Shown: positions 1 to 12,231, numbered from the whole stretch's first letter. The stretch is 58,129 nucleotides of DNA, filler included, from Dugesia japonica (GCA_001938525.1; 6 parts of 6 records of this genome joined end to end with filler, not necessarily neighbours in it); one strand, 5' to 3'. Notes: a model not told the origin generated them from the sequence alone. Numbers and translations are program-made.

Positions 1-42
1 TTGATACTTGATAAATATTTGTAATAGATTGGTGTTGAGTTT

Positions 43-1039
43 TTAAAAAAAATTTTAAAATGCAGCTATGTTGAGTTTTAAAATTTATTTTTGGCTGATA
101 ATTTAAAAAGAAATTTATTAAAAATTCCAGGCACGTCATTTTCAGTGTATATATGTTTCATCTGAGTAGCATTTATTAATAAAAATTCTTAGCTACGTGA
201 CTTTTAGTGTATGTTTGTTGCAGCTGTGTTGCATTTGAATTTCATTTATTAAAATATATCTATCAAAAAACTTCAAAGAGAGGAGTCTTTGTGATATTTA
301 CTTAATAAAATATAACTATTAAAAATAAGAAAAGAGGGGAGTCTTTGTGGTATTTACATGATCAAATATTCAAATATTTAAATAAAATCTTTTCTTTACA
401 AGATGATATAAGACAGAACTTTTTTTCATAAAAAATCATATATGCTAGGTAATATTTTATAAAAAACATTAGTCATGCAATTTGTAATAAAGAATCTTAT
501 AAGTGATGCAATGTTTCTATAAAACATATTACTATTGACAACTGTCTATAACAAACATATTACTAGTGACAGCTTTCTATAAAAAACCTAAAAACTAATG
601 ACAATTGTCTATAAAAAATCTCATTAGCTGAGAATATTTCTTTACAAAATGATAAAAACATAGAACGTTTTTCATAAAAATCATAAATTCATGGAGCCGT
701 TCCATGTATCACTAATAAGTCTATAAATACAAACTTATAGGAAAATATTTTTATGATTTTTTAGGGTTAATGAGTATATTATTTACATAGTTAGCTTGTA
801 TTATTTACATAGCAACCGTGCAATTTAAGGATTATGAGTTTACATATGTTAATGAGTGTAAAGGTTTTATGAGTATATTATTTGTTTAGTTACCTTTATT
901 ATTTACATAGCAACCGTGTAATATAATGCTAATGAGGTTAATATTTATAAAGTAACCCTATATTTAAGGGTTTAACAGTATATTATTTACATATTAACCG
1001 TGTAATAAGAGGTCACCAGGCAAAATGCATGTTCATGAA
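43..1039 (+). repeat. Left terminal inverted repeat, with internal TATTATTTACATAG(CAACCGTG) repeats
   Basis: Reverse complement of ~10672-11380. For example 241-293 TTCATTTATTAAAATATATCTATCAAAAAACTTCAAAGAG pairs with ~11195-11245, and 983-1039 pairs with ~10672-10740. Confidence 0.9.
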
Positions 1040-1190
1040 ATTAATTATCATACATTGATTTATTCAAAATATTGTATTTGTTTACTTAGTATTATAAAAG
1101 ACCTTATTAATTTACTAATTATTAAAAAAATAAAAGAAAACAATTATCCAATAAAACATTTATTAATATAACATTTGTTTCTCATATTCT

Positions 1191-1695
1191 TCAGTCATCT
1201 TCAAAATTCTTTCTTTTAAGATTTCATGATGGTTCTTATTTTCATTAATAGGGAAATTCGATTGAAGTTCTATGATGAAATTGTTCATAACTTGAAACAT
1301 GTCTATTGTTTTTGTCTGCTATAAATATTTAAAATATTCATTCATCATCAACAGCATATATTCATGAAGTAATTCTGGTAAACTTTCATGTAATATTTCT
1401 AACACTAATTCTAAACAAAATGAAATAAAATATCATAAATTAAACTCTTACCATAATAATTTTCATAATTTTTGCCTTCAATTTCAGTATAACCACTATC
1501 ATCATCATTATCATCATCATCATCATGACATGTATCTTCCATCTTTTCATCTTCAAAAGTTTTTTCTTCATTAATATTGATTTTTTGGCTATCATTAGCT
1601 TCCATTATATTTTCTTTTCTTTCATGTTTAATGTCATTTTCAAGTCCTTTCTCTCCTTGGACAATGTTTTCAAAAATAATTTCACAAGTATTCAT
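1191..1695 (-). pseudogene. Element accessory gene A, acidic, two exons (intron 1411-1451)
   Basis: Removing the 41-nt GTAAGA...TTTAG intron joins ...YENYY to ELVLEILHESLPELLHEYML in frame; one internal stop. Homolog with the same intron at 25833-26398. Confidence 0.75.
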
Positions 1696-1704
1696 TTTAT
1701 AAAA

Positions 1705-1871
1705 AAGTGAATTTACTTTAAAAAAAAACACGTCTCATTTATATAAACCCGGTAACCAATCATATCAATCATAGTAAATATTAACAAATCATATCAATTA
1801 TAGTAAATATTAATCAAAATTAGTATCGCAACTAGTATATAAGCAAAGGTTTACATGAAAGTAATTACATT
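1705..1871. promoter_or_regulatory. Divergent promoter between genes A and B
   Basis: TATATAAA on minus (1738-1745), TATATAAG on plus (1836-1843), and two 29-nt AATCATATCAATYATAGTAAATATTAA repeats between them. Confidence 0.55.
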
Positions 1872-1883
1872 TAAAACTGAAAA

Positions 1884-2224
1884 ATGCAAGAGAATTAACT
1901 CACTAAAGAAATCGTGTCAACAATAACTGTGGAACTTGGAAAAATGACTGATTTCCAATTACAAGATCTTTCTTTTGAGAACAACGATTATCTATAACTT
2001 TAAAGTATTTATTTTTTATTTCATTATAAATTATTATTTTATTTTAGAAATCAGTTTCATTAAAAAGATCCTAATTTAGTTTGGTTATGTCTGGAATTTT
2101 TGAGAAGGATAGGAATATACTGGAAGCTATATTTGCAAGATTAAGCAGACAAATTGAAGTCAATGAAACTATTTATATAGGTTTTAAAGAACAAGATAAA
2201 AACAATTATGAAGACGACAGCTAA
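1884..2224 (+). pseudogene. Element accessory gene B, probable intron 2005-2047
   Basis: MQEN*LTKEIVSTITVELGK..., a GT..AG pyrimidine-rich spacer, then ...EKDRNILEAIFARLSRQIEV. Inverted homolog at 25224-25566. Several stops; the splice frame is not cleanly restored. Confidence 0.55.
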
Positions 2225-2529
2225 TATATGATTCGAGTGAAGATTAAAGGCTTCAAGAAGTCCATTAATTCAGTAGGAGTCATTTGGAAAGTTAAAAACA
2301 TAGAAAATAAGATCTAAAGTTGCTTAATTAATGTTTGCTTTATGTTATTTTTTATTGAAATAAATATTTAGGTAATAAATCTTGTTAATTTCTTTTAAAA
2401 CAAAACTTACTAAATAAAAACCTAATAAAAAACTAAATAAAAACAAACTAAAATAATAAAACAAACACTTAATAATAATAATACATTTTTTAATAATGAC
2501 AAAAATATTTTATAATTGCCATTATTGCG

Positions 2530-2937
2530 AGAATAATTATTCGACATAACCATTGATTGTTTTATAGAATTCATTTAATATAAAAGCTTTGATCACAATT
2601 TTAAAAAAGTCAATTCCTAACAAAGGCAAGGTCGAAATATCGAATTGTTATCCAATATCAATAAAAAACCAAACTTTTGATCAAAGATTTTACATTAAAT
2701 GAATTCGACAAAAATATTCATTATAATGATTAAGATCGTCTAGATTGTTCTCTATGTCTACCATCAGAATTAACTTTGCACATCCGAGAGCCGCGGTTGC
2801 CTTTCTTCGTTTAATAATCCCTGTTCTTCGTATATATCTGTGAGCATTCCTAAATTAAATTTATTAATAAACGTCAAACCTGTCTTACTAAAGTCCTCTT
2901 CCATTTTCTTCATTTTTCCAGTATTTGATGAATTCAT
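2530..2937 (-). pseudogene. Element accessory gene C, degenerate, function unknown
   Basis: ATG downstream of TATATATA. Coding-like run MNSSNTGKMKKMEEDFSKT... with stops and a frameshift. Confidence 0.35.
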
Positions 2938-3096
2938 TTTTAAAATTACAAGAAATAATAATGAAATGCATTATATATATGCATAATAAAAAACCACAAC
3001 GTATTATATTAATTATTTGAAATTTTAATATCTAAATTTAAATTGATATTTTTTGTACTTGCATTGTAAACGTTTAGCATCCGTGTTGCGAATTTT

Positions 3097-3573
3097 TTAA
3101 ATTTTATCAAGCAAATTGCACATATCTGAAGTAATGTTATTCACATATCCCTGAAAATACAAATTATTAAACCCTAGTGTCACTAGTTTTCCTGTTGAGA
3201 ACACATTTACACATAGAAGGTCATATTTTACAAGTCTTAGAGCAAGAAATAACTCTCGTTCGAACCAACAGTTGACTATTCTTGCTAATTTATACAAATT
3301 TATTGACACTCCCATGTTTACGAAAATTTTTAACGATTGTAATTGTACATTTTTTATATCATAGGGGTTTAAATCATTCGGTTTCAATAGTTTCTTACAA
3401 CCTATTATTCTACATTTTCCTGATCTGAAGAATAAAATTGTATATTTTTCACTTTTGACTTGGAATTGACATGATGTGCCTATAGGAAAGCTCGTTTTCT
3501 TTGTTACTTCTTGCGGCACTTCACCTCCGTAATTAATATTGGTTATCATAATTAATGAATTAATGAGGAACAT
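3097..3573 (-). CDS. TATA-box-binding-protein (TBP)-like protein, element-encoded (likely start ATG 3549)
   Basis: Two TBP repeats: TILFFRSGKCRIIGCK, and INLYKLA...FERELFLAL...CVNVFSTGKLVTLG. Canonical TBP has TALIFASGKMVCTGAK and YEPELFPGL...LIFVSGKIVITG. Confidence 0.85.
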   Translation of the reverse strand: MFLINSLIMITNINYGGEVPQEVTKKTSFPIGTSCQFQVKSEKYTILFFRSGKCRIIGCKKLLKPNDLNPYDIKNVQLQSLKIFVNMGVSINLYKLARIVNCWFERELFLALRLVKYDLLCVNVFSTGKLVTLGFNNLYFQGYVNNITSDMCNLLDKI

Positions 3574-3662
3574 TTGGGGTCTTGATGGATTTAATTTAAT
3601 TGATTCGTTAAAACAAATATAAACAATGTAATAAATTATAAATAAATTAAAGAAAAAACAAG

Positions 3663-4219
3663 ATGAAGAGATTAAGAAATGATGTAGTCTATCAAATGTT
3701 AGGAACTAGTAGTAGTGTGAAAAAGCAGATAAAGAGCTTGGATTGACTAAATCTGAATTTTGTAATATTAAAACGAAAATTATAAATGGTTTTGATACTA
3801 ATGGGAGCAAAAGATTAGGACGAGAAGATGTTATTGCTGTTGATGATTTGTATCAGGACGCAAATAAAGAAAAGGATTTCAATAATTTATTCACAAAAAT
3901 ATAGAAACATTGTAATTTTACTGTGATATTTATTACTCAAAATCTATTTCATCAAGGGGGTAGTCATAGAACCCGCAATTTAAACGTGCAATATTTGGTT
4001 CTATTCAAAAGCCCTAGAGATCAGACGGTCATTGATTTTCTAGCAACACAAGCATATTCTAATGATATACAATTTCGTATTGAACCATTTCAAGATGTCA
4101 CAGAAATACCACATGGATATTTATTTCTTAAGTTTACACAACAATGTCCAGATGATTATAGAGTAAAAACAGATATATTCAATTCAAATGGTATCACAAT
4201 ATATAAACAAAATACGTAA
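3663..4219 (+). pseudogene. A32/FtsK-HerA-like genome packaging ATPase
   Basis: Walker B VIAVDD and Polinton-type motifs IFITQNLF, NVQYLVLFKSPRD, PHGYLF. Walker A decayed; internal deletion and a stop. Confidence 0.88.
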
Positions 4220-4498
4220 TTTTTCATAATATTATAAAAAAATAACAAAATTTAAGAAATTTGTAGTTGATCAAGTAACTGATGGTGTTGTTAATCATCA
4301 AAAACTATCTTTTGAGAAGAAAAAGTATGGAAAAAAGAAGAAACCATCATATAGAATCAATCATGTAGAAACAATCATAGGAAACATCATATAAATAAGA
4401 AGAATCGAGTAAATAAAAGAAATATATTTAAAAAACTTGCAAAAAGAAATAGAAAGAAGCTGAGAATGATGAACAGATAAACGATTATAAACAAATAA

Positions 4499-4867
4499 AT
4501 GATATGTATTATTTTAATCAATACAAATGAAATTACAAAGAAGCATTCTGTTATTTTTACAGCTTTGATTAAATCATCAAAACCATTTAGAATGAGAATT
4601 TTACAATCATTCCCACCATTTGTTATAGATGATTTACTTGAAATTATTATAAATATTGTTCGTAGTAATGTAGATTGGAGTGCAGCCAAATAAAAAACAN
4701 NNNNNNNNNNNNNNNNNNNNNNNNNNNNNNNNNNNNNNNNNNNNNNNNNNNNNNNNNNNNNAATAGAAAATAAATGAGACGAGTAATGAATAATCAAAGT
4801 GGTGGTTTTTTAGCAGCATTGCTACGAATTGCATTAGCTGCATTAGGCTTAACTCATTTTAAATAAA
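4499..4867 (+). pseudogene. Small Polinton/adintovirus core-type protein ending QSGGFLAALL
   Basis: IDDLLEIIINIVRSNV and, after the N gap, NNQSGGFLAALLRIALAALG. This is the QxGGFL-amphipathic tail typical of Maverick small ORFs next to the ATPase. Confidence 0.6.
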
Positions 4868-4973
4868 CAATGGTAGACTTTATAACATCAATATTAATAA
4901 TTAACTCAAATGAACAATGGGTGGATTGCAATCATTACCAACTTTGACTTGAAATTTGAATAGAATTGTTGTA

Positions 4974-5365
4974 ATGGAAACAAAAATGAAGACAATATAG
5001 ACGGATCCAAAAAAACCCGGAGGTTTTCGAGGCATAGAAAAGTTGAGGAAAGCAGCTCAAAGAACAAAACGAAGGACAAAAAAGGAGTTATCTGGTCATC
5101 TAGTGTACAGTCTAAACAAGTCAATGTTGAAAAGATTTCCAACAAAAGCGTATAAAGCCTATGGTATTTATGATTTATGATAAATGTATCTAATTGAAAT
5201 GATTAATAAATTTTACAAGTATATATTTTGTCTTTTATCGTTGTGTTCAATAGATTTGCAAGAACTGTTCCATTTTAATCAAAGGGACTGAAATAATAAA
5301 CAATATTATGTCAAATGGAATGGATACAAAAACTAAGTTGGATAGTATCAACACAAATAAAATAA
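4974..5365 (+). pseudogene. Retroviral-like (c-)integrase with chromodomain, catalytic core largely deleted
   Basis: DPKKPGGFRGIEKL...YSLNK...KRFP...GIYDL...YKYI...VFNRFARTVP, then directly QYYVKWNGY...SWI (chromodomain). Confidence 0.82.
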
Positions 5366-5381
5366 CAAGACGAAAGTTTAG

Positions 5382-6513
5382 ATGGAATCAAATAACTTCT
5401 ATACACTTTTACCTAGTAATAGTAGTCCACTATTCATCCAAATAATACTGCTAGAAATGACATTGTTGATCTGCAAAACCCAATTTACATGTATAGTAGT
5501 TGGGAAGTAGCCTTGATGGATTTCACCTTAGTATATTCAGCCATGCCGATTTACAGTCCATCTAGGATTGAATATGAAATATTTACAATAATTGAAAAGG
5601 AACTAATACTTGATGTTAACAACAAAGAAATAATAAATAATAATAATAATAAATAATAATAAATAAATAAATAATAAAGTTCTTTTAACTGTTAATTCTC
5701 AAGGCAAATATAAAAATAACTAGGATACTGTTATACAATTATCAAAAGAAAACGTGTTATTCTTTACTAGTGATATTACATTTCACAGTTTATTCTTTGA
5801 TAGTCGGGAAACTTTAAAAAGATTTTCATATTTTAGCGGTGAATATGTAAGGGAAGATATTAAATTAATTTTTTATGCTAGTAAGAATTTTGAAGATAAA
5901 TCATTTGCTCTTGGCTTTGGTAAGTTTAAAAACGATGAGTCCATTGGAAAAAAAATTAAATATTATTTTCTGATTGTAACTAAACATTCTTTTCAATTTG
6001 AATCTGAATTGTATATAAAGAATTTAAATCAATTTTAAAAAGCACCTTCTATAGTTATTTAAAACTTTTAAATTAAATAAAGATGAACTATTTGAATTTA
6101 CATTAGCAAGTAGAACTAAAAGTGTTAAATTCGATAAAATATTAAAATTAAAACATTAGGATCAAAAGAATTGCAATATACTTGAATACAATTGAATGAT
6201 AAACAACTACTATTTAAAAGTAATAAGAAACCTAGAATATTAAAGTGTTATAATGAAATGTCCATCTATTGTAGTATTGTTAAGCCTATAGTTGTTGGTG
6301 ATGTTAATGTTCTTTTATTGAAAGCATTATGGGTAGAAGAACATGAGAATGATGAGGTAGTTTAATTAATTGTTGATCATACCATGTATTTACCTATTTC
6401 TTCATCATATATAAACAATATAGAAATATCAGTATACGTGATGATAGTAGACAACTAGTCAACTTTGCTGAAGACTCAAAAACTCATTTAACGTTACATT
6501 TTAGAAAAATTAA
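5382..6513 (+). pseudogene. Minor capsid protein (penton, single jelly roll)
   Basis: N-terminal FYTLLPSNSS..HPNNT...WEVAL; C-terminal IYCSIVKPIVVGD...YLPI...IEISIRDD...LTLHFRK. Frameshifts present. Confidence 0.85.
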
Positions 6514-6514
6514 T

Positions 6515-6960
6515 AAAGAATTCTGATATTGTATCATTGTACAGTACTAGTCAAGCAGGTGGAGAATTACCTTACTTTCTTGGAAAACAGTATGTATCTG
6601 GTTGGTTACGAACAAAAGGGAGATTTGCTTTGCCTATTCTGAGACGTATTGGTTCTTTTGGTATGAAAACAGCTCATGGTTTACTAGCTAATTGAAAATA
6701 CGGGAAAATACTAACCACATTGAAATCAAATGCATTAGCTGAACTTGGAAATGTAGTTTCTTCCTTATCTAATAGAGTTACCAGTATGATTCCAAAAGTA
6801 GCTGGTGTAGTACCATAAAGTATAACTAATAAAATACCATTTGAAATAACTAATATACTAACAAATCAATCTAAAGCAGAACCGACTAATAAAAAACGTA
6901 AAAAATCACATGCATAACGTATAAACAAATGAATGAGAGGACATGGAACAATATTTGAAA
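6515..6960 (+). pseudogene. Polinton core-type basic protein (QAGG motif)
   Basis: YSTSQAGGELPYFLGKQY.SGWLRT.GRFALPILRRIG, lying between minor and major capsid genes as in other Mavericks. Confidence 0.7.
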
Positions 6961-6964
6961 AATT

Positions 6965-7127
6965 ATTTTAGGTAAAACTGAATTATGTAATTTTGATCAA
7001 CCATCTCCACATGTTGTAATTGAAAATGGTACTTTCGAAGATGTCTTTCCTATGAATTCAATTTATGAATCGCAAAGCGATGTAGAGTTTTTTATAAATG
7101 GATCTCAAACAGAATATATGGATTTGA
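6965..7127 (+). pseudogene. Major capsid protein (double jelly roll), N-terminal piece
   Basis: KTELCNFDQPSPHVVIENGTFEDVFP...VEFFINGSQTEYMDL matches the Polinton MCP N-terminus (KSELDLF..P.TQ..IE...IEF.I.G...Y.DL). Confidence 0.8.
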
Positions 7128-7488
7128 AGTAGGTAGATAGTGGAGCATGTCCACTATAGAAAATCGTCCACAATCGAGCTCCCCTTCCCCTCGTCGGCAA
7201 TTGAAAAAGTGTGGACGAATTTTCAAAAATAAATTGAAATATTGGACGAATTTTTATAAATAAATTAAAATTATAGACGAATATTTAAAAATAAATTAAA
7301 AGTATGGACGAATTTTAAAAAAATTAAATTAATTAATAAAAAAAACAAAAAGTAGGGATAAATTATTAAAAATAAATTTAAAAAGTTTTACAAAATTAAA
7401 AGTGGTGCTTAATTTTTTCTGTGTATTTAGTTCAAATGTGTATTTAGAATTCAAATATGAAAAAGCAAGAAATTACTTCAAGCATGAG

Positions 7489-7815
7489 ATGATTTTCTTA
7501 AAGAAAACAATCAATTATACTTTTCAAGTAATATTTGATTTGCTAATTACTTTATTAATACTTTTTATTTAGGATCCAGTAAAAGTAAAGCCTTGTCTTT
7601 ATGATTTGTACATATCTGAAATCAGTAATAAAAATCAAAAGACTCTTAATGAATTATTCGTAAGAATTAATGAAAACATTAAAATTGAAGATGCAACATT
7701 TATTAAATCTAAAGAAGAAAATGTTCAAGAAAGTAAATCAATCATTACAGTTGAAATTATTAGTTATAAGAAAGTTAAATCAACTCAAAAGTGTGAAGAT
7801 AATTTTATTGAATAA
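7489..7815 (+). CDS. Small two-exon ORF in the nested fragment (intron 7528-7572), function unknown
   Basis: The 45-nt GTAATA...TTTAG intron joins MIFLKKTINYTFQ in frame to DPVKVKPCLYDLYISE. Confidence 0.45.
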
Positions 7816-8027
7816 ATATTAGTATAATTAATAGACTTATCTTAATAATTTCCAAGTTTTTTAATAACTTTTATAAAACGAGTATAAAACAGTAAAGTTT
7901 ATGTAATTTAATCCCATGTTATGCGGTGATCTAGTGACTGTTTTGTATAACATTTGGCCACTGAAATTATAAGATTAAAATGAATAATTTAAGCAATAAA
8001 GATTACTTAAAGTATTTGGATCTCTTT

Positions 8028-8700
8028 CTATTTTACATTCATGTTGTCGATTGCTAAAGCCTTTTGTTTGATATTCATTTGAACTTTATTTATTGATTCG
8101 GGACTTGAATTACTTAAATCATCAGTAAATTCTTTAATTAGTGCTTCTTTTTTGTTCTCATAAAACTCATTTACAACCGTTGACAATTTAAGTTCATGAA
8201 ATTTAACTAAATTATCCATTAGAAATGACATGTTTTCCAAAGAATCTGGATTAAATGTCAGTTTATCAATTAGTTCTAATCTTCCAAGTATTACCAGGCT
8301 ATCCAAGAATTGGATTTTAATAATAGCTTGTAGACCACTTTGTAATGTTACTTCTAATTTATGACGATAAATTATAATTTCATTGTTTGATATTTCCTCA
8401 ATTGCATCGATAAATGGGTCAAGAGAGAATAAATTTGTTAGATTATTGGCAACATCAACTTTACATTTGTTGAGATAATCTTCATAATTCAACGANNAAC
8501 AACCTTTAGTCTCTGAAATAATTTTTGAAATAAAAGTTCTTCCATGCCATTTCATGTATTTATCATCATCTTCAATAACAAATCTTATTGTATATCAAAT
8601 TAAAGTTACTTGATAAGGATTGTAAAGATTTGACTGATACGGATAATGCGGTTCCCAGTACCTATATGTTGCATACACTTTTTTAGGATGTAATTCTTTC
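8028..8700 (-). pseudogene. Unknown protein in the nested fragment
   Basis: 175-aa ORF that extends ~48 codons further upstream through one stop; no recognisable motif. Confidence 0.5.
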
Positions 8701-8724
8701 GTTAAAAAATTTCAAAATTGAATG

Positions 8725-9625
8725 TGGAAATGGATCTTATCTTCACAAAGCATTGATTGAAACTTTAATAAATTATAATGATGATAGTAAGAATATATGT
8801 CTTGCAACAATGGTATATGGATCAGAAGCAGATAGAAAAAAGTCTATTGCAAAATCAAAACAATTATCATTATGTTGTTCATTGCAACTTGATTTCATGG
8901 ATCAACCAAAATAACTTATTCCTGTTGTCAATGTTCATATTTCAGTGAAACAAAAAGATGCTAATATTTGTTAGGAATCTGCAGCCAATGCACCTAAATA
9001 TGTATTACTATATGCAAAATTAATGGTTAGACGTGTACGCATTGAACCGTCAGTACTTGCTGCTCATCAAATGGATCTAAATAAGCAAAATTCGGTTTAT
9101 CCAATAAGAACCAAAGAAATCGTAGCATTTGCAATTAGTAAAGATAGTTCATCGTTTTATAAGGAACAAATCTTTGGTGATCGTCGATTACCTACCTTTA
9201 TTTTGGTTACATTTCAAAGTGGTGAACAATATAATGGTAGCTATAAAAGCTCGAGTTCAACATTTCAAAATTTTGGTGCTGCTTTTGTTTCCTTGACGAA
9301 AACACTGATTGTCTAGAAATATATACTCAAGATTTTACAAATGATAATAATGCCACAACATATATGTAATCTACAGTACGAAATATAAAATATTTGGATA
9401 AGAATATGAATTGTGGAATAACACTTCAAGAATTTAAGGATAATTATCCCTTCTTTACATTTGTTCTCGCTCCAGAATTCGATATAAATCAGAGCCAAGG
9501 AACAAGGAAATTTGAGATTGGATATGAAGTTTGCTTAAGCTTTAACAATATCGGCATATGCTCTCATTTATGGAGTATTTGAAAAAAGAAATTCAGATTA
9601 AAAAAACGGAACAGTATTGGTGTAA
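8725..9625 (+). pseudogene. Major capsid protein, central and C-terminal part
   Basis: YLHKALIETLINY, LQLDFMDQPK*LIP, LMVRRVRIEPSVLAAH, YPIR, RLPTFILV, YNGSY, FFTFVLAP. Confidence 0.9.
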
Positions 9626-9628
9626 ACA

Positions 9629-9880
9629 ATGTTATGTATTCTTGAAATAATTGTAATAAAGTAAGAGTTATTGTTTAATTTATTGTTTAATTTATTAATT
9701 CTATTCAGATTGAACGCAGTACATCAATGTTACTTAAATCATCTTATTTTAGTAAACAATGCCTTAATCGTCCAAACTCATTCAACAAATCTATGTGAAG
9801 AACACTAGATAGCGGTTTACAATAAAAGAAGCAACATTACACATGGAATATTTATTTGCATGTATTTGTATTTTAAGAAA
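9629..9880 (+). pseudogene. Element accessory gene D (intron 9661-9708)
   Basis: ATG 3 nt after the MCP stop; 48-nt GTAAGA...TTCAG intron conserved at 27269-27316. Confidence 0.5.
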
Positions 9881-10220
9881 TAAATGTTTTATTGTCAAAC
9901 AGTCTTGTTCATTTTTCTTTTTAATAATACTTAGAAACAAAAGTACTCTATTTAAATAAACTTTTTATTATTTCATATTATTTATTTAATTTTGTGAACA
10001 TGTCATGAACATAAATTTGACATGACACGAGCATGCATTTACATTAGTACCTCATATTACATGGTTATTATGTAAATAAACCCTATATTACAAGGTAACT
10101 TTGTAAATAATATATTTATCAAACTATTTACTTATAAGTATTTTTATAAAAATAATGCAAGAAAGAAACAAAATTATTATTCAAATCTATTTATTAAACA
10201 ACAAAATAATAATAATTACA

Positions 10221-10469
10221 TTAGTTCCGACTAAACAAATAAAATATCACAATGGGTGTCTATAAAGTTACAGCAATAAATTTATTTTTCTTTTGGATCT
10301 TCAATTCTTCCTTAATTTTATCCATGAATATTGATCGGACAATGAGTTCAACATATTCATGTTTTCTCAATAGACCATTGTCGATCCTGCTTATGAATTG
10401 AATTTCGTCAACGGATCAACTGGTAATTGAATCTGTAATTTGTTTAATATCTCTTTCCATTTGGTTCAT
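10221..10469 (-). pseudogene. Element accessory gene E, small protein with C-terminal hydrophobic (TM-like) tail
   Basis: Homolog of ORF 27685-27903 (VDEIQF...YVELIVRSIF.DKIKEELK); two stops in this copy. Confidence 0.65.
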
Positions 10470-10493
10470 TTTTATAATGACTTTGAATTGTAA

Positions 10494-10562
10494 AAGTGAC
10501 TTATATTACGAAACCTGCTGTTTATATACTTGCGGCGATACACACATACTCGTTATTTGTTA
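10494..10562 (-). promoter_or_regulatory. Element promoter: CAAATAACGAGTATG-TGTATCGC-N-AGTATATAAA, with TCACTT initiator ~30 nt downstream
   Basis: The same block precedes non-homologous gene B (25580-25650; partial at 1821-1871). Confidence 0.6.
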
Positions 10563-10671
10563 GATTTTATTGATCGTTAGAGGTTTTTAAGGAAATGAAT
10601 GAATATTATTAATTTTAATTTTTATGATTAGGTGTATTTTGTTTTAAATGATATGATTTGTTATCTAAAAT

Positions 10672-11715
10672 ATTCATGAACATGACGCGAGCATGTATTG
10701 TGCATGGTGATCTCATATTAAATGGTTAATGTGTAAATAAAATACACACTATGTAAATAATGTAAACACAAAATATATATTACACGGTTACATTGTAAAT
10801 AATACACTCAAAATCCTTATAATACATGGTTGCTTTGTAAATAGTACAAGGTAACTATGAAAATAGTATACTCATTAACCCTATACAATCATAAAAATAT
10901 TTTTATATATAGACTTATTAGTTATATATGGAAAGGCTCCATGAATTTATGATTTTTATGAAAAAGGTTCTATGTTTTTATCATTTTGTAAAGAAATGTT
11001 CTCAGCTAATGAGATTTTTTATTAAAGATAGCATCGCTAATGAGATTTTTTATAGAAAAGTGTCACTAGTAATATGTTTTTTATAGAAAATTACCTAGCA
11101 TATATGATTTTTTATGAAAAAAGTTCTGTCTTTTATTACCTTGTAAAGAAAAGATTTTATTTGAGTATTTGAATATTTGATCATGTAAATACGACAAAGA
11201 CTCCCCTCTTTGAAGTTTTTTGATAGATATATTTTAATAAATGAAACTCAGATGCAACACAGTTGCAACACATATACATTGAAAATCACGTGCCTGATAT
11301 TTTGAATAAATTTTTTTTTAATTTTCTCCCAAAAAGAAATTTTAAAACTCAACATAGCCCCCATTTTGAATTTTTTAAATATATCCAATAGGTATGCAAC
11401 TCAGATGTAACTCAGATGCAACACATACAATGAAACTTACGTGCGTGGTAATTTTATATGGATTTTTATTGATATTTTTAATAAAAGCAATAAGTATGCA
11501 AAATGAAAAATACACACACCCAGGATTAAAAAAACTGATCCGATCAAAAAATAAGTTGACATGACCAAATACTTTTTATCCTAAAATTCTAGAAAAAAAA
11601 CTAGTCCAAAAATACTGGCACCAAAATTCTGGCACAATCGTAATGTGTTTCCAAGCCACCCTCTCCAAATTAGGACATAAATAAAATTGTGCCAGTGCGC
11701 TACTATCTACCTACT
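10672..11715 (-). repeat. Right terminal inverted repeat, ending in AGTAGGTAGATAGT (read on minus)
   Basis: Matches 43-1039 in inverse orientation. The last ~330 nt contain GTGCCAG repeats and a terminus shared with three other element ends in the window. Confidence 0.88.
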
Positions 11716-12231
11716 TGTAATCTTCAAACAGTCTTCTAATTTCTTGATTGACATTCTTTGGAATATTCAGAACATTTCTCACTCTTTTTGAATTCTCAAC
11801 AACTAGCTCAACAACATCCTTTGAATCAATAAAATCCACTTCGGTTATCTTCATTCTATATATTCTCATCATATCAATGCTCTCAATAAATTCAGGATGA
11901 AGATCTTTGAAAATTACATATTCTTTTTCTTTTCGTTTCCCATACCAATGTAAATGTAATTTAGTTTTACCAATACATATTTTTCTTTTGTCTGAAATAC
12001 AACTGATATTAAAATCTGCAACAGCGATAACGCCGGTATCCGATTCTTCTTCAAACCTCTATCATCTTCTTGTGCAATACACAAAACTTTAGATACCGAA
12101 AAATCTTTTACTCGAAATAATAAACAATCCTTAAAACTATGACCTTCCTTTCTAAAAGATTTATTTATAGGCTTAATATTTATTCTATATTACTACGAAT
12201 ATTAGAGAGCTTTTCAAATATATAAAACATA

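What the first reader, a model, noticed from the sequence alone, without database searches (positions are those of the whole stretch)
3097..3573. Polinton-like virus encoding its own minimal TATA-binding protein
Seen: a stop-free ~150-aa ORF with both TBP repeats lies between the TIRs, head-to-head with the packaging ATPase. It keeps the xxF.SGK/TGK..xG strands and an ERELF motif like EPELF, whose phenylalanines intercalate into TATA DNA in canonical TBP. Repeat 1 is shortened, and there is no N-terminal extension or intron. Most neighbouring genes are broken by stops. Known: TBP homologs occur in large nucleocytoplasmic DNA viruses but are not part of the usual Polinton core (pPolB, integrase, ATPase, protease, two capsids). 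Inference: a small integrating virus captured TBP, either to recruit host Pol II to its own promoters or to compete with host TBP. I cannot confirm from here that this is undescribed.
Basis: partly seen in the sequence, partly recalled or inferred. Interest (0 to 1): 0.9.

Follow-up and report, generated by a model that had tools for sequence, protein, structure and literature searches.

The report
Dead polinton copy with own TBP
The open reading frame is a real, shortened TATA-binding protein that is a standard gene of one lineage of polinton-like viruses, whose virion genes all sit behind a shared TATA-like box, but the copy in this window is a decayed, non-functional element.

Summary
Window 3097-3573 (-) is an intact 150-158 aa ORF. 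It passes Pfam's TBP threshold, and its high-confidence model matches only TBP structures. It lies between about 1 kb terminal inverted repeats, divergent from an A32-like packaging ATPase.

It is not a one-off retrocopy. All 7 related elements fetched through their capsid gene also carry it, and so do 53 metagenome loci. These elements also hold integrase, double-jelly-roll capsid and protein-primed polymerase genes. dN/dS among relatives is 0.05-0.35.

New here: TATAAACA(A) lies 30-45 nt upstream of most genes of these elements. ATPase and capsid genes always have it. TBP, integrase and polymerase genes mostly lack it. Many TBP genes instead carry a CCAAT box, a canonical TATA box and an initiator-like promoter. 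I infer that a host-type promoter expresses the viral TBP, which then drives the virion genes.

The window copy is dead. It has 18 in-frame stops, at least 3 frame changes and one insertion, and no polymerase or protease gene. Its TBP ORF departs at 5 of 35 near-invariant columns, so the open frame is probably chance survival (P about 0.04).

Prior art is a figure-legend label only (Starrett et al.). The host is unknown.

The parts
45..1007 (.). Left terminal inverted repeat. The outer end is known only to about +/-5 nt. It holds internal 31- and 56-nt tandem repeats.
   Evidence: Inverted-repeat pairs I1-I8, 72-96% complementary. Alignment of the two ends. Tandem repeats.
10750..11385 (.). 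Right terminal inverted repeat (outer end approximate).
3097..3573 (-). Short TBP-family ORF, intact, 158 aa. Relatives point to a start at 3549, which gives 150 aa.
3574..3663 (.). Divergent intergenic region between the TBP and ATPase genes. It holds the ATPase gene's TATAAACAA box at 3618-3626 (+).
   Evidence: The closest relative L006 has the same layout upstream of its TBP gene.
3664..4216 (+). A32-like packaging ATPase pseudogene. It has 1 in-frame stop, and about a fifth to a quarter of the protein is not recovered.
   Evidence: tblastn gives 61-69% identity to the ATPases of relatives, E down to 1e-72. The relative's protein hits Pfam Pox_A32 at E=1.5e-5, 25 bits against a cut-off of 22.8.
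4556..4696 (+). Fragment of the small conserved gene that follows the ATPase gene in relatives (p104). It runs into the N gap at 4700-4761.
   Evidence: The N run is shown and was not filled.
4974..5287 (+). Remnant of the rve integrase. Only about the N-terminal quarter is left, with 3-4 in-frame stops and 1 frame change.
   Evidence: The relative's protein hits Pfam rve at E=2.3e-12 plus a weak chromodomain.
5361..6514 (+). Pseudogene of a conserved 330-440 aa protein of unknown function (p373 family, duplicated in some relatives). It has 1 stop and 2 frame changes, and about half of the protein is recovered.
6519..6824 (+). Pseudogene of a conserved protein of about 108 aa that precedes the capsid gene. 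It has 1 in-frame stop.
6962..9622 (+). Double-jelly-roll major capsid protein pseudogene. It has 10 in-frame stops and 1 insertion of about 1.5 kb, with no frame change between the matched pieces.
   Evidence: tblastn E down to 5e-89 against L066. The model of the relatives' protein has pLDDT 89.4. Foldseek matches the iridovirus, mavirus, Sputnik and PBCV-1 capsid proteins at E about 1e-13 to 1e-14.
8031..8594 (-). Stop-free ORF (188 codons, spanning the 2-N gap) of unknown origin, lying inside the span of the capsid pseudogene.
   Evidence: No hit in Pfam or PHROGs. No match in any fetched locus.
10233..10469 (-). Remnant of a small gene that in relatives lies between the TBP and ATPase genes. 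Here it is displaced to the right end, on the other strand.
   Evidence: E=5.6e-11 to an 88-aa ORF of L065 and 2.6e-8 to a 97-aa ORF of L012.
4202..6928 (+). Four further exact TATAAACAA boxes, at 4202-4210, 4486-4494, 6410-6418 and 6920-6928. All are on the gene strand, and each lies shortly before a gene start.
   Evidence: 5 exact matches in the window against 1.04 expected, and 1 of 200 shuffles reaches 5.
11386..12231 (.). Flank outside the element, not identified.
   Evidence: The ORF 11714-12058 (-) has no homologues and only a faint Pfam primase hit at E=0.03.

Best explanation
**What it is (shown).** The window holds an integrated, decayed copy (about 11.3 kb, TIR-bounded) of a polinton/Maverick-type virus. 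In its lineage a short TBP (about 150 aa: a truncated repeat 1 plus a full repeat 2) is a conserved core gene under purifying selection.

**How it probably works in intact members (inferred).**
1. The TBP gene is transcribed by the host's nuclear Pol II machinery. Many copies carry a cellular-type promoter: a CCAAT box, a canonical TATA box and an initiator-like ATCA[T/C]TATT.
2. The viral TBP then binds the element's own TATAAACA(A) box. This box lies 30-45 nt before the start codons of the ATPase, capsid and other virion genes.
3. Through its retained C-terminal stirrup (E-P-E-L-F-P) it brings in host TFIIB and Pol II.
4. The result is a two-step early-to-late programme. This works like the herpesvirus TBP-like late factor, without being its relative.

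**This copy (inferred).** The gene is most likely no longer in use. The frame has stayed open by chance while conserved residues drift.
For: **Identity**
- Pfam TBP above threshold. Family profile against PDB TBPs, E=6.5e-21.
- AlphaFold2 pLDDT 91.9, with TBP-only Foldseek matches.
- Internal repeat, E=3.5e-6.

**Core gene of the lineage**
- 23 close homologues. In the representative library, 58 clusters at E<=1e-30 and 574 at E<=1e-10.
- 53 metagenome loci, with the conserved order TBP, ATPase, p104, rve, p373, p108, capsid, p111, pPolB.
- 7 of 7 loci fetched through the capsid gene, from 5 samples, carry a PF00352 gene.
- dN/dS is 0.05-0.35 in all but one of the 42 scored pairs.

**Virus nature**
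- Double-jelly-roll capsid fold and A32-like ATPase.
- rve integrase with a weak chromodomain. PF03175 polymerase. Faint Peptidase_C5 hit.

**Promoter box**
- TATAAAC is the most enriched 7-mer at -60 to -15 (15-fold). TATAAACA occurs 89 times on the gene strand and 8 times on the other, against 21+/-4 expected for both strands together.
- In the independent loci L060-L066 the counts are 59 against 5. 34 of 81 genes of L061-L065 carry it, mostly 32-45 nt before the ATG.
- By gene: ATPase 5/5, capsid 5/5, rve 1/5, polymerase 0/2, TBP 1/4.
- After TATAAA, position 7 is C in 71% of 118 sites, position 8 is A in 78% and position 9 is A in 58%.
- The window has 5 exact copies against 1.04 expected.

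**TBP genes' own promoters:** CCAAT box plus canonical TATA box plus an initiator-like motif in many loci.

**DNA- and TFIIB-facing residues**
- Both Phe of repeat 2 and the second Phe of repeat 1 align with the TBP phenylalanines.
- E, E and F of the stirrup motif are invariant.
- A near-invariant Ser replaces the Asn of strand S1' of cellular TBPs. This could go with the odd C at box position 7.

**Decay of this copy**
- 18 in-frame stops, at least 3 frame changes and 1 insertion. No polymerase or protease gene was found.
- The TBP ORF departs at 5 of 35 near-invariant columns (family median 1). It is 4-12 identity points further from outgroups than its sister sequences.
Against: - No binding, expression or transcription-start data exist. 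The box could simply be a host-TBP TATA box, with the viral protein doing something else.
- CCAAT boxes were seen by eye in only about 11 of 49 distinct TBP upstream regions, and no statistics were run on them.
- Other sub-lineages, including the window's own, have a different upstream layout.
- Repeat 1 lacks S2 and H2, so a full saddle on DNA is not assured. The fourth Phe could not be placed.
- The host is unknown, so nuclear against giant-virus-factory transcription is not settled.
- For this copy, an intact frame among broken neighbours (P about 0.04) and a dN/dS of 0.28 against L006 leave some room for retained function.
Confidence: 0.6

Rival explanations
1. Virophage-like use. The short TBP works with the transcription machinery of a co-infecting giant virus in its cytoplasmic factory, and TATAAACA(A) is a giant-virus-type promoter.
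For: Among viral predicted structures, the nearest folds are giant-virus TBPs such as Heterosigma akashiwo virus, EsV-1 and Terrestrivirus, best E=1.8e-8. Many polinton-like viruses and virophages depend on giant viruses (established knowledge; abstracts listed).
Against: - The elements carry an rve integrase with a chromodomain and their own polymerase.
- The TBP genes have CCAAT, TATA and initiator-like promoters of cellular type.
- The box is a near-canonical TATA box at Pol II-like spacing.
- Cellular TBPs match as well as viral ones do.
Confidence: 0.15
2. Host shut-off or decoy. The truncated TBP competes with host TBP at TATA boxes, or titrates TFIIB, without activating transcription.
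For: - Repeat 1 has lost S2 and most of H2. From general knowledge of TBP complexes, these are surfaces that cellular partners use.
- The DNA-facing Phe residues and the stirrup motif are kept.
Against: A decoy does not explain why the element's own virion genes carry a specific, position-fixed variant box with C at position 7, or why the TBP gene itself mostly lacks that box.
Confidence: 0.1
3. In this genome the TBP ORF has been domesticated by the host, kept as a TBP-related factor while the rest of the element decayed.
For: - It is the only recognised gene in the element with no break.
- At the neighbours' break rate (about 22 per 1030 codons), the chance of none in 150 codons is about 0.04 (my Poisson estimate).
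- dN/dS against L006 is 0.28.
Against: - It has 5 departures at 35 near-invariant columns, two of them in the stirrup motif. Its branch is consistently longer than those of its sisters.
- The ATPase also has only one stop in about 166 matched codons, so break density is uneven.
- The exact protein is not on record elsewhere.
Confidence: 0.08
4. It is a host TBP retrocopy or a chance TBP-like ORF peculiar to this one element copy.
Against: The gene is present with conserved synteny in dozens of elements from many samples, including all 7 fetched through the capsid gene. The fold and Pfam evidence is strong.
Confidence: 0.01

Closest known systems
Cellular TATA-binding protein (Pfam PF00352; archaeal and eukaryotic TBP and TBP-related factors)
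   Same: - The same fold and two-repeat build.
- Repeat 2 aligns along its full length with the TBP repeats, including both phenylalanines, the SGK turn and the E-P-E-L-F-P stirrup motif.
   Different: - About 150 aa against about 180 for the core.
- Repeat 1 lacks S2 and most of H2.
- Ser stands in place of the conserved Asn of S1'.
- There is no N-terminal tail.
- It is encoded by a mobile virus-like element.
'TBP' genes labelled on maps of non-animal mid-size linear dsDNA (MELD) viruses, Starrett et al. 2020/2021 (bioRxiv 10.1101/697771; PMC8502044)
   Same: These are polinton-type elements with adintovirus-like PolB and integrase, annotated with a TBP-like gene and also with TRAF-like genes. 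TRAF/MATH genes lie next to L004 and L061 here.
   Different: The label appears only in figure legends. The text gives no family definition, distribution, selection analysis or promoter link. I could not see the figures, so I cannot say whether the same lineage is meant.
TBP homologues of giant viruses (Nucleocytoviricota), e.g. Heterosigma akashiwo virus, EsV-1-53 and mimivirus-like viruses
   Same: They are virus-encoded TBP-fold proteins and the nearest viral structural matches.
   Different: Those proteins are 186-500+ aa and sit in 100 kb to Mb genomes that carry their own RNA polymerase. The protein here is 150 aa in a 12-16 kb element with no polymerase subunit genes seen.
Herpesvirus TBP-like late-gene factor (BcRF1/ORF24/UL87 family; PMC7498053, abstract listed)
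   Same: It works in a similar way. A virus-coded TBP-fold protein reads a variant TATA box that marks late genes and brings in host Pol II. Weak fold matches were found (E about 4e-3 to 6e-3).
   Different: It is not a family member. There is no sequence relation, and the herpesvirus proteins are much larger and act within a six-protein complex.
Polintons/Mavericks, adintoviruses and polinton-like viruses
   Same: Relatives have TIRs, pPolB, rve integrase, an A32-like ATPase, a double-jelly-roll capsid protein and an adenain-like protease.
   Different: TBP is a lineage-wide core gene here. An element-wide TATAAACA(A) box is present. The window copy lacks the polymerase and protease genes.

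Membership tests
TBP family (PF00352) | Profile score above the curated threshold | tested here: met
   37.9 bits against a cut-off of 22.9, E=1.6e-9. The family profile against PDB TBPs gives E=6.5e-21.
TBP family (PF00352) | Two tandem alpha/beta repeats that form the saddle fold | tested here: met
   The model has pLDDT 91.9. All Foldseek PDB matches at E<=0.001 are TBP, TM 0.6-0.73. N half against C half gives hhalign E=3.5e-6. Repeat 1 is truncated: 4 strands and short helices.
TBP family (PF00352) | Four DNA-kinking phenylalanines, two per repeat | tested here: inconclusive
   F109 and F125 (repeat 2) and F49 (repeat 1) align with TBP phenylalanines and are invariant in the family. The fourth candidate, F29, could not be placed with confidence.
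TBP family (PF00352) | Binds TATA-box DNA and nucleates a pre-initiation complex | not testable with these tools
   Indirect evidence only: a conserved TATAAACA(A) box before the element's genes.
Polinton/Maverick-type element | Terminal inverted repeats | tested here: met
   About 45-1007 against 10750-11385, 72-96% complementary. No target-site duplication could be determined.
Polinton/Maverick-type element | [quoted passage not shown] | tested here: not met
   No match in the window. It is present in relatives as PF03175. The window copy has lost it.
Polinton/Maverick-type element | Retrovirus-like (rve) integrase | tested here: inconclusive
   Only about the N-terminal quarter survives, and it is broken. 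Relatives have full rve with a weak chromodomain.
Polinton/Maverick-type element | Double-jelly-roll major capsid protein and packaging ATPase | tested here: met
   Both are present as pseudogenes. The capsid fold was shown on the relatives' protein. The relative's ATPase hits Pox_A32 at 25 bits against a cut-off of 22.8.
Polinton/Maverick-type element | Adenain-like cysteine protease | tested here: not met
   No match in the window. There is only a faint Peptidase_C5 record on the 123-aa gene product of L060.

The most novel reading that the evidence does not exclude
A whole lineage of polinton-type viruses carries its own general transcription factor together with a matching cis-code. A minimal TBP, expressed from a host-type CCAAT/TATA/initiator promoter, reads a variant box (TATAAACA(A), with C at position 7) that marks the virion genes. 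The altered S1' residue would set that specificity. This would be the first described self-contained transcription switch of polintons, and the smallest natural TBP with changed box specificity.
Probability: 0.35. Interest if true: 0.8.

Novelty: new variant of a known kind. Interest (0 to 1): 0.6.

Why it matters
- **Polinton transcription.** How polintons/Mavericks are transcribed, and whether they run an early/late programme, is essentially unknown. A lineage with its own TBP, a position-fixed variant TATA box on virion genes and a different, cellular-type promoter on the TBP gene turns that question into one that can be tested by sequence, structure and expression.
- **TBP itself.** The protein is a natural minimal TBP, with repeat 1 cut down by about a quarter. 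That bears on which parts of the saddle are needed for DNA and TFIIB contacts.
- **Annotation.** The family is common in metagenomes, and at least one source's annotation names its members plain cellular TBP.

Tried and rejected
- **Reassigned genetic code as the cause of the 'broken' neighbours.** Rejected. All three stop codons occur in frame (9 TAA, 6 TAG, 3 TGA), opposite many different residue kinds, and translating with ciliate tables gives no coherent long frames.
- **RIP-like mutation.** Rejected. The indices are TpA/ApT 0.83 and (CpA+TpG)/(ApC+GpT) 1.30.
- **Pfam and PHROGs on the window's own stop-free pieces.** Nothing significant. The genes were identified only through intact relatives.
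- **IMG/VR scans with the TBP and capsid alignments.** No relatives.
- **Exact look-up of the window's TBP.** Not on record.
- **Host identification.** This failed by three routes:
  - the flank ORF has no homologues;
  - the sample and accession strings appear in no held paper.
- **ORF 8031-8594 and other unassigned pieces against all fetched loci.** No match.
- **Tree against cellular and giant-virus TBPs.** Not attempted. The sequences are too short and too divergent for a trustworthy topology with the tools at hand. I note only that archaeal TBPs score best by profile, which I do not read as evidence of origin.
- **tRNA genes.** None found.

Full report
**1. The observation**

The piece (1-12231, about 25% G+C) holds an ORF at 3097-3573 on the minus strand: 158 codons from the first ATG, with no stop. 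Relatives begin at the position of the second ATG (3549), which gives 150 aa.

- Pfam's TBP model is passed: E=1.6e-9, 37.9 bits against a cut-off of 22.9, two stretches.
- The single sequence finds an archaeal TBP in PDB at E=7e-4. A profile of the family finds it at E=6.5e-21, and eukaryotic TBPs at 1e-13 to 1e-17.
- An AlphaFold2 model built on 23 sequences has mean pLDDT 91.9. All 44 Foldseek PDB matches at E<=0.001 are TBP chains (best E=1.7e-8, probability 1.0, TM 0.6-0.73).
- The two halves are related to each other (hhalign E=3.5e-6).
- In the model, repeat 2 has the full strand and helix set. Repeat 1 (about 66 aa) has four strands, a 6-residue first helix and a 4-residue second helix.

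The family has E-P-E-L-F-P at that place, with both E and the F invariant. A microsporidian TBP shows the same string.

**2. The element**

- **Terminal inverted repeats.** Arms of about 1 kb lie at about 45-1007 and 10750-11385.
- **Gene identification.** The window's own stop-free pieces gave nothing in Pfam or PHROGs. Intact relatives identify the genes.
- **Genes on the plus strand, divergent from the TBP ORF:**
  - an A32-like packaging ATPase, 3664-4216;
  - a small conserved gene, 4556-4696, which runs into the N gap (not filled);
  - the N-terminal remnant of an rve integrase, 4974-5287;
  - a conserved protein of unknown role, 5361-6514;
  - a protein of about 108 aa, 6519-6824;
  - a major capsid protein, 6962-9622.
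- **Capsid fold.** The relatives' 408-aa protein models at pLDDT 89.4. It matches the double-jelly-roll capsid proteins of an iridovirus, mavirus, Sputnik and PBCV-1 at E about 1e-13 to 1e-14.
- **Displaced gene.** A small gene that relatives keep between the TBP and ATPase genes lies displaced at 10233-10469 (-).
- **Missing genes.** No polymerase or protease gene is found in the window.

**3. State of this copy (counts only)**

| Gene | In-frame stops | Frame changes | Other damage |
|---|---|---|---|
| ATPase | 1 | 0 between matched pieces | about a fifth to a quarter not recovered |
| Integrase | 3-4 | 1 | about three quarters missing |
| Unknown 5361-6514 | 1 | 2 | about half recovered |
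| 108-aa gene | 1 | 0 | |
| Capsid gene | 10 | 0 | one insertion of about 1.5 kb |
| Weak p154-like match | 1 | 0 | |
| TBP ORF | 0 | 0 | |

- In all there are 18 distinct in-frame stops (9 TAA, 6 TAG, 3 TGA) and at least 3 frame changes.
- The stops lie opposite many residue kinds, and RIP indices are negative. This is ordinary decay, not a variant genetic code or RIP.
- At roughly 22 breaks per 1030 matched codons, the chance that 150 codons escape is about 0.04 (my Poisson estimate).
- The window's protein departs from the family at 5 of 35 columns that are at least 90% conserved. The family median is 1.
- It is also 4-12 identity points further from five outgroup members than its two sister sequences are.
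- dN/dS against the closest relative (L006, 71% identity) is 0.28.

I read this as a gene that was under selection for most of the divergence and is now drifting in a dead element.

**4. The family and its context**

- **Abundance.**
  - 23 short homologues (130-174 aa, plus one of 275 aa) were found, the best at 71% identity.
  - An exhaustive profile search gives 58 clusters at E<=1e-30 and 574 at E<=1e-10.
  - 53 JGI metagenome loci encode relatives.
- **Synteny.** Where contigs are long enough, the order is p154, TBP, ATPase, p104, rve, p373, p108, capsid, p111, pPolB. In one sub-group TBP lies after the capsid block.
- **Unbiased test.** I fetched seven loci through the capsid protein instead of through TBP: L060-L066, from five samples. 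All seven carry a PF00352 gene. In L061 it is a 56-aa fragment in a visibly degraded copy.
- **Gene set of the lineage.**
  - L060 also shows a 1073-aa putative polymerase (no Pfam hit on record; the relation to L001's PF03175 protein was not tested) and a faint adenain-like (Peptidase_C5) hit.
  - L066 shows an rve integrase with a faint chromodomain and a 1191-aa PF03175 polymerase.
- **Selection.** Among TBP genes of relatives, dN/dS is 0.05-0.35 in all but one of the 42 scored pairs.
- **Orientation.** The head-to-head TBP/ATPase arrangement of the window is shared by L006. In L066 the TBP gene is likewise on the strand opposite the ATPase, with a Bcl-2-like gene between them. So it is a lineage trait, not damage.

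**5. A shared promoter box**

Reading the 70 nt before each gene of four relatives showed a recurrent TATAAACAA.

- **Unbiased 7-mer count.** Over -60 to -15 of ORF starts, TATAAAC ranks first: 50 observed against 3.3 expected.
- **Strand bias.**
  - In the discovery loci, TATAAACA occurs 89 times on the gene strand and 8 on the other. First-order Markov simulations give 21+/-4 for both strands together.
  - In the seven loci not used to find the motif, the counts are 59 against 5.
- **Position.** 34 of 81 genes of L061-L065 have it within 80 nt, mostly 32-45 nt before the ATG.
- **By gene class**:

| Gene | Loci with the box |
|---|---|
| ATPase | 5 of 5 |
| Capsid | 5 of 5 |
| Integrase | 1 of 5 |
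| Polymerase | 0 of 2 |
| TBP | 1 of 4 (at an atypical distance) |

- **Box composition.** Among 118 TATAAA sites 20-65 nt upstream of ORFs, position 7 is C in 71%, position 8 is A in 78% and position 9 is A in 58%.
- **The window.** It keeps five exact TATAAACAA, all on the gene strand and each shortly before a gene start. The expectation is 1.04, and 1 of 200 shuffles reaches 5.
- **TBP genes' own upstream regions**.
  - Many loci have a CCAAT/ATTGG box, then a canonical TATA box (of the kind GTATAAATA, GTATATAAGG or GTATAAAAG), then ATCA[T/C]TATT close to the ATG.
  - I counted CCAAT boxes by eye in about 11 of 49 distinct regions and ran no statistics on this.
  - Other sub-lineages, including the window's, show a different layout.

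**6. Mechanism**

Shown:
- a TBP-fold core gene under purifying selection;
- an element-wide, strand- and distance-fixed variant TATA box on the virion genes;
- a different promoter type on the TBP gene.

Inferred:
- The TBP gene is read by host Pol II from a cellular-type promoter.
- Its product binds the variant box and recruits host TFIIB and Pol II, giving a two-step programme.

Points in favour of the inference:
- Both phenylalanines of repeat 2 and the second of repeat 1 are retained at TBP-aligned positions.
- The stirrup motif is invariant. From my knowledge of TBP-TFIIB-DNA structures, this is the TFIIB-contact region. That was not tested here.
- A near-invariant Ser stands where cellular TBPs have the Asn of strand S1'. 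This could go with the unusual C at position 7.

Rivals are giant-virus-dependent transcription, a decoy or shut-off role, and host domestication of this copy. Each is set out with its tests in the rival section.

**7. What is known**

- Full-text searches that combine 'polinton' with TBP and TATA terms find one relevant source. Starrett et al. [quoted passage not shown]
- TRAF/MATH genes lie next to L004 and L061 here.
- A green-alga paper mentions sporadic TBP genes in mirusvirus-like elements.
- JGI's automatic annotation names three family members plain TBP.
- I found no description of the family, its distribution, its truncation or the promoter box.
- Giant-virus TBPs are the nearest viral folds. 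The herpesvirus TBP-like late factor is a functional analogue, not a relative.

**8. Limits and slips**

- **Host.** It is unknown. L066, the closest long relative, carries a Bcl-2-like gene, so an animal host cannot be excluded. I learned this only from the look-up's output and did not fetch more of that type.
- **Contig and N runs.** The contig does not look human. The N runs at 4700-4761 and 8496-8497 were left as they are.
  - The tblastn tables printed, and my notebook entry 2, give bounds of matched pieces that imply where the capsid gene is interrupted.
  - After the error I worked out the place of one stop in my reasoning.
  - The error line printed a 32-residue translation that contains stops.
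  - I did not use or repeat any of these, and I built no joined, repaired or consensus sequence.

**9. Verdict**

- It is corrected on three points: this copy is dead, the gene is core rather than an oddity, and it has been labelled before.
- The promoter-box link is, as far as the held literature shows, new.
- Interest 0.6; novelty: new variant of a known kind.

Noticed in passing
L001, L004, L005, L012, L060-L066 and other loci; window 3618-3626, 4202-4210, 4486-4494, 6410-6418, 6920-6928 (+): An element-wide TATAAACA(A) box lies 30-45 nt before the start codons of most genes, even where that places it inside the end of the upstream gene. The strand bias is strong (89 against 8, and 59 against 5), and position 7 is C in 71% of sites.
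   Followed up: yes
Upstream of the TBP genes in L004, L013, L018, L020, L024, L030, L036, L041, L060, L062 and others: The TBP genes' own promoters often have a CCAAT/ATTGG box, a canonical TATA box and an ATCA[T/C]TATT motif next to the ATG. This is a cellular Pol II-type layout, distinct from the virion-gene box. It was seen by eye only, with no statistics.
   Followed up: partly
L066:3563-3940 (-): A Bcl-2-family gene (PF00452) lies between the TBP and ATPase genes in the closest long relative of the window. It hints at an animal host or at interference with apoptosis. I did not pursue it because I cannot tell whether this is a virus of animals.
   Followed up: no
L004:854-1858 and 5476-6447; L061:3952-4941: MATH/TRAF-domain genes lie directly beside the elements in sample ERZ25039515. 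This matches the 'TRAF' labels in the Starrett et al. maps. Whether they belong to the host or the element is unclear.
   Followed up: no
L063:1-2421; L065:9926-13786 (-); L064:9888-13868: Some relatives have no PF03175 polymerase call. Instead they carry a 1158-1326 aa protein, which in two cases has an Endonuclease_7 hit. This may be a divergent or exchanged replicase. L065 also has a dUTPase gene.
   Followed up: no
window 8031-8594 (-), and 7205-7403: The span of the capsid pseudogene holds foreign DNA. It includes a 188-codon open frame with no detectable relatives, four 31-nt tandem units, and a weak match to the p154 gene that sits upstream of TBP in relatives (E=6e-5).
   Followed up: partly
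window 521-618, 246-369 and 11044-11120: The TIRs contain arrays of 31-nt and 56-nt direct repeats, mirrored in both arms. They may be binding sites for a terminal or integration protein.
   Followed up: no
window 11714-12058 (-): An open frame in the flank has a faint Pfam match to the small subunit of DNA primase (E=0.03) and no homologues in the large protein search. It may be a remnant of another element.
   Followed up: partly
L001, L004, L061, L062 and L063 (all from ENA sample ERZ25039515): One sample holds at least five different copies of this element type, some intact and some degraded (TBP reduced to 56 aa and the polymerase split in L061). This looks like a host genome colonised repeatedly.
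   Followed up: no
L012:5658-7681; L066:6353-9377: The conserved gene of about 340 aa with unknown function, which lies between the integrase and the capsid block, is duplicated or triplicated in tandem in some relatives.
   Followed up: no
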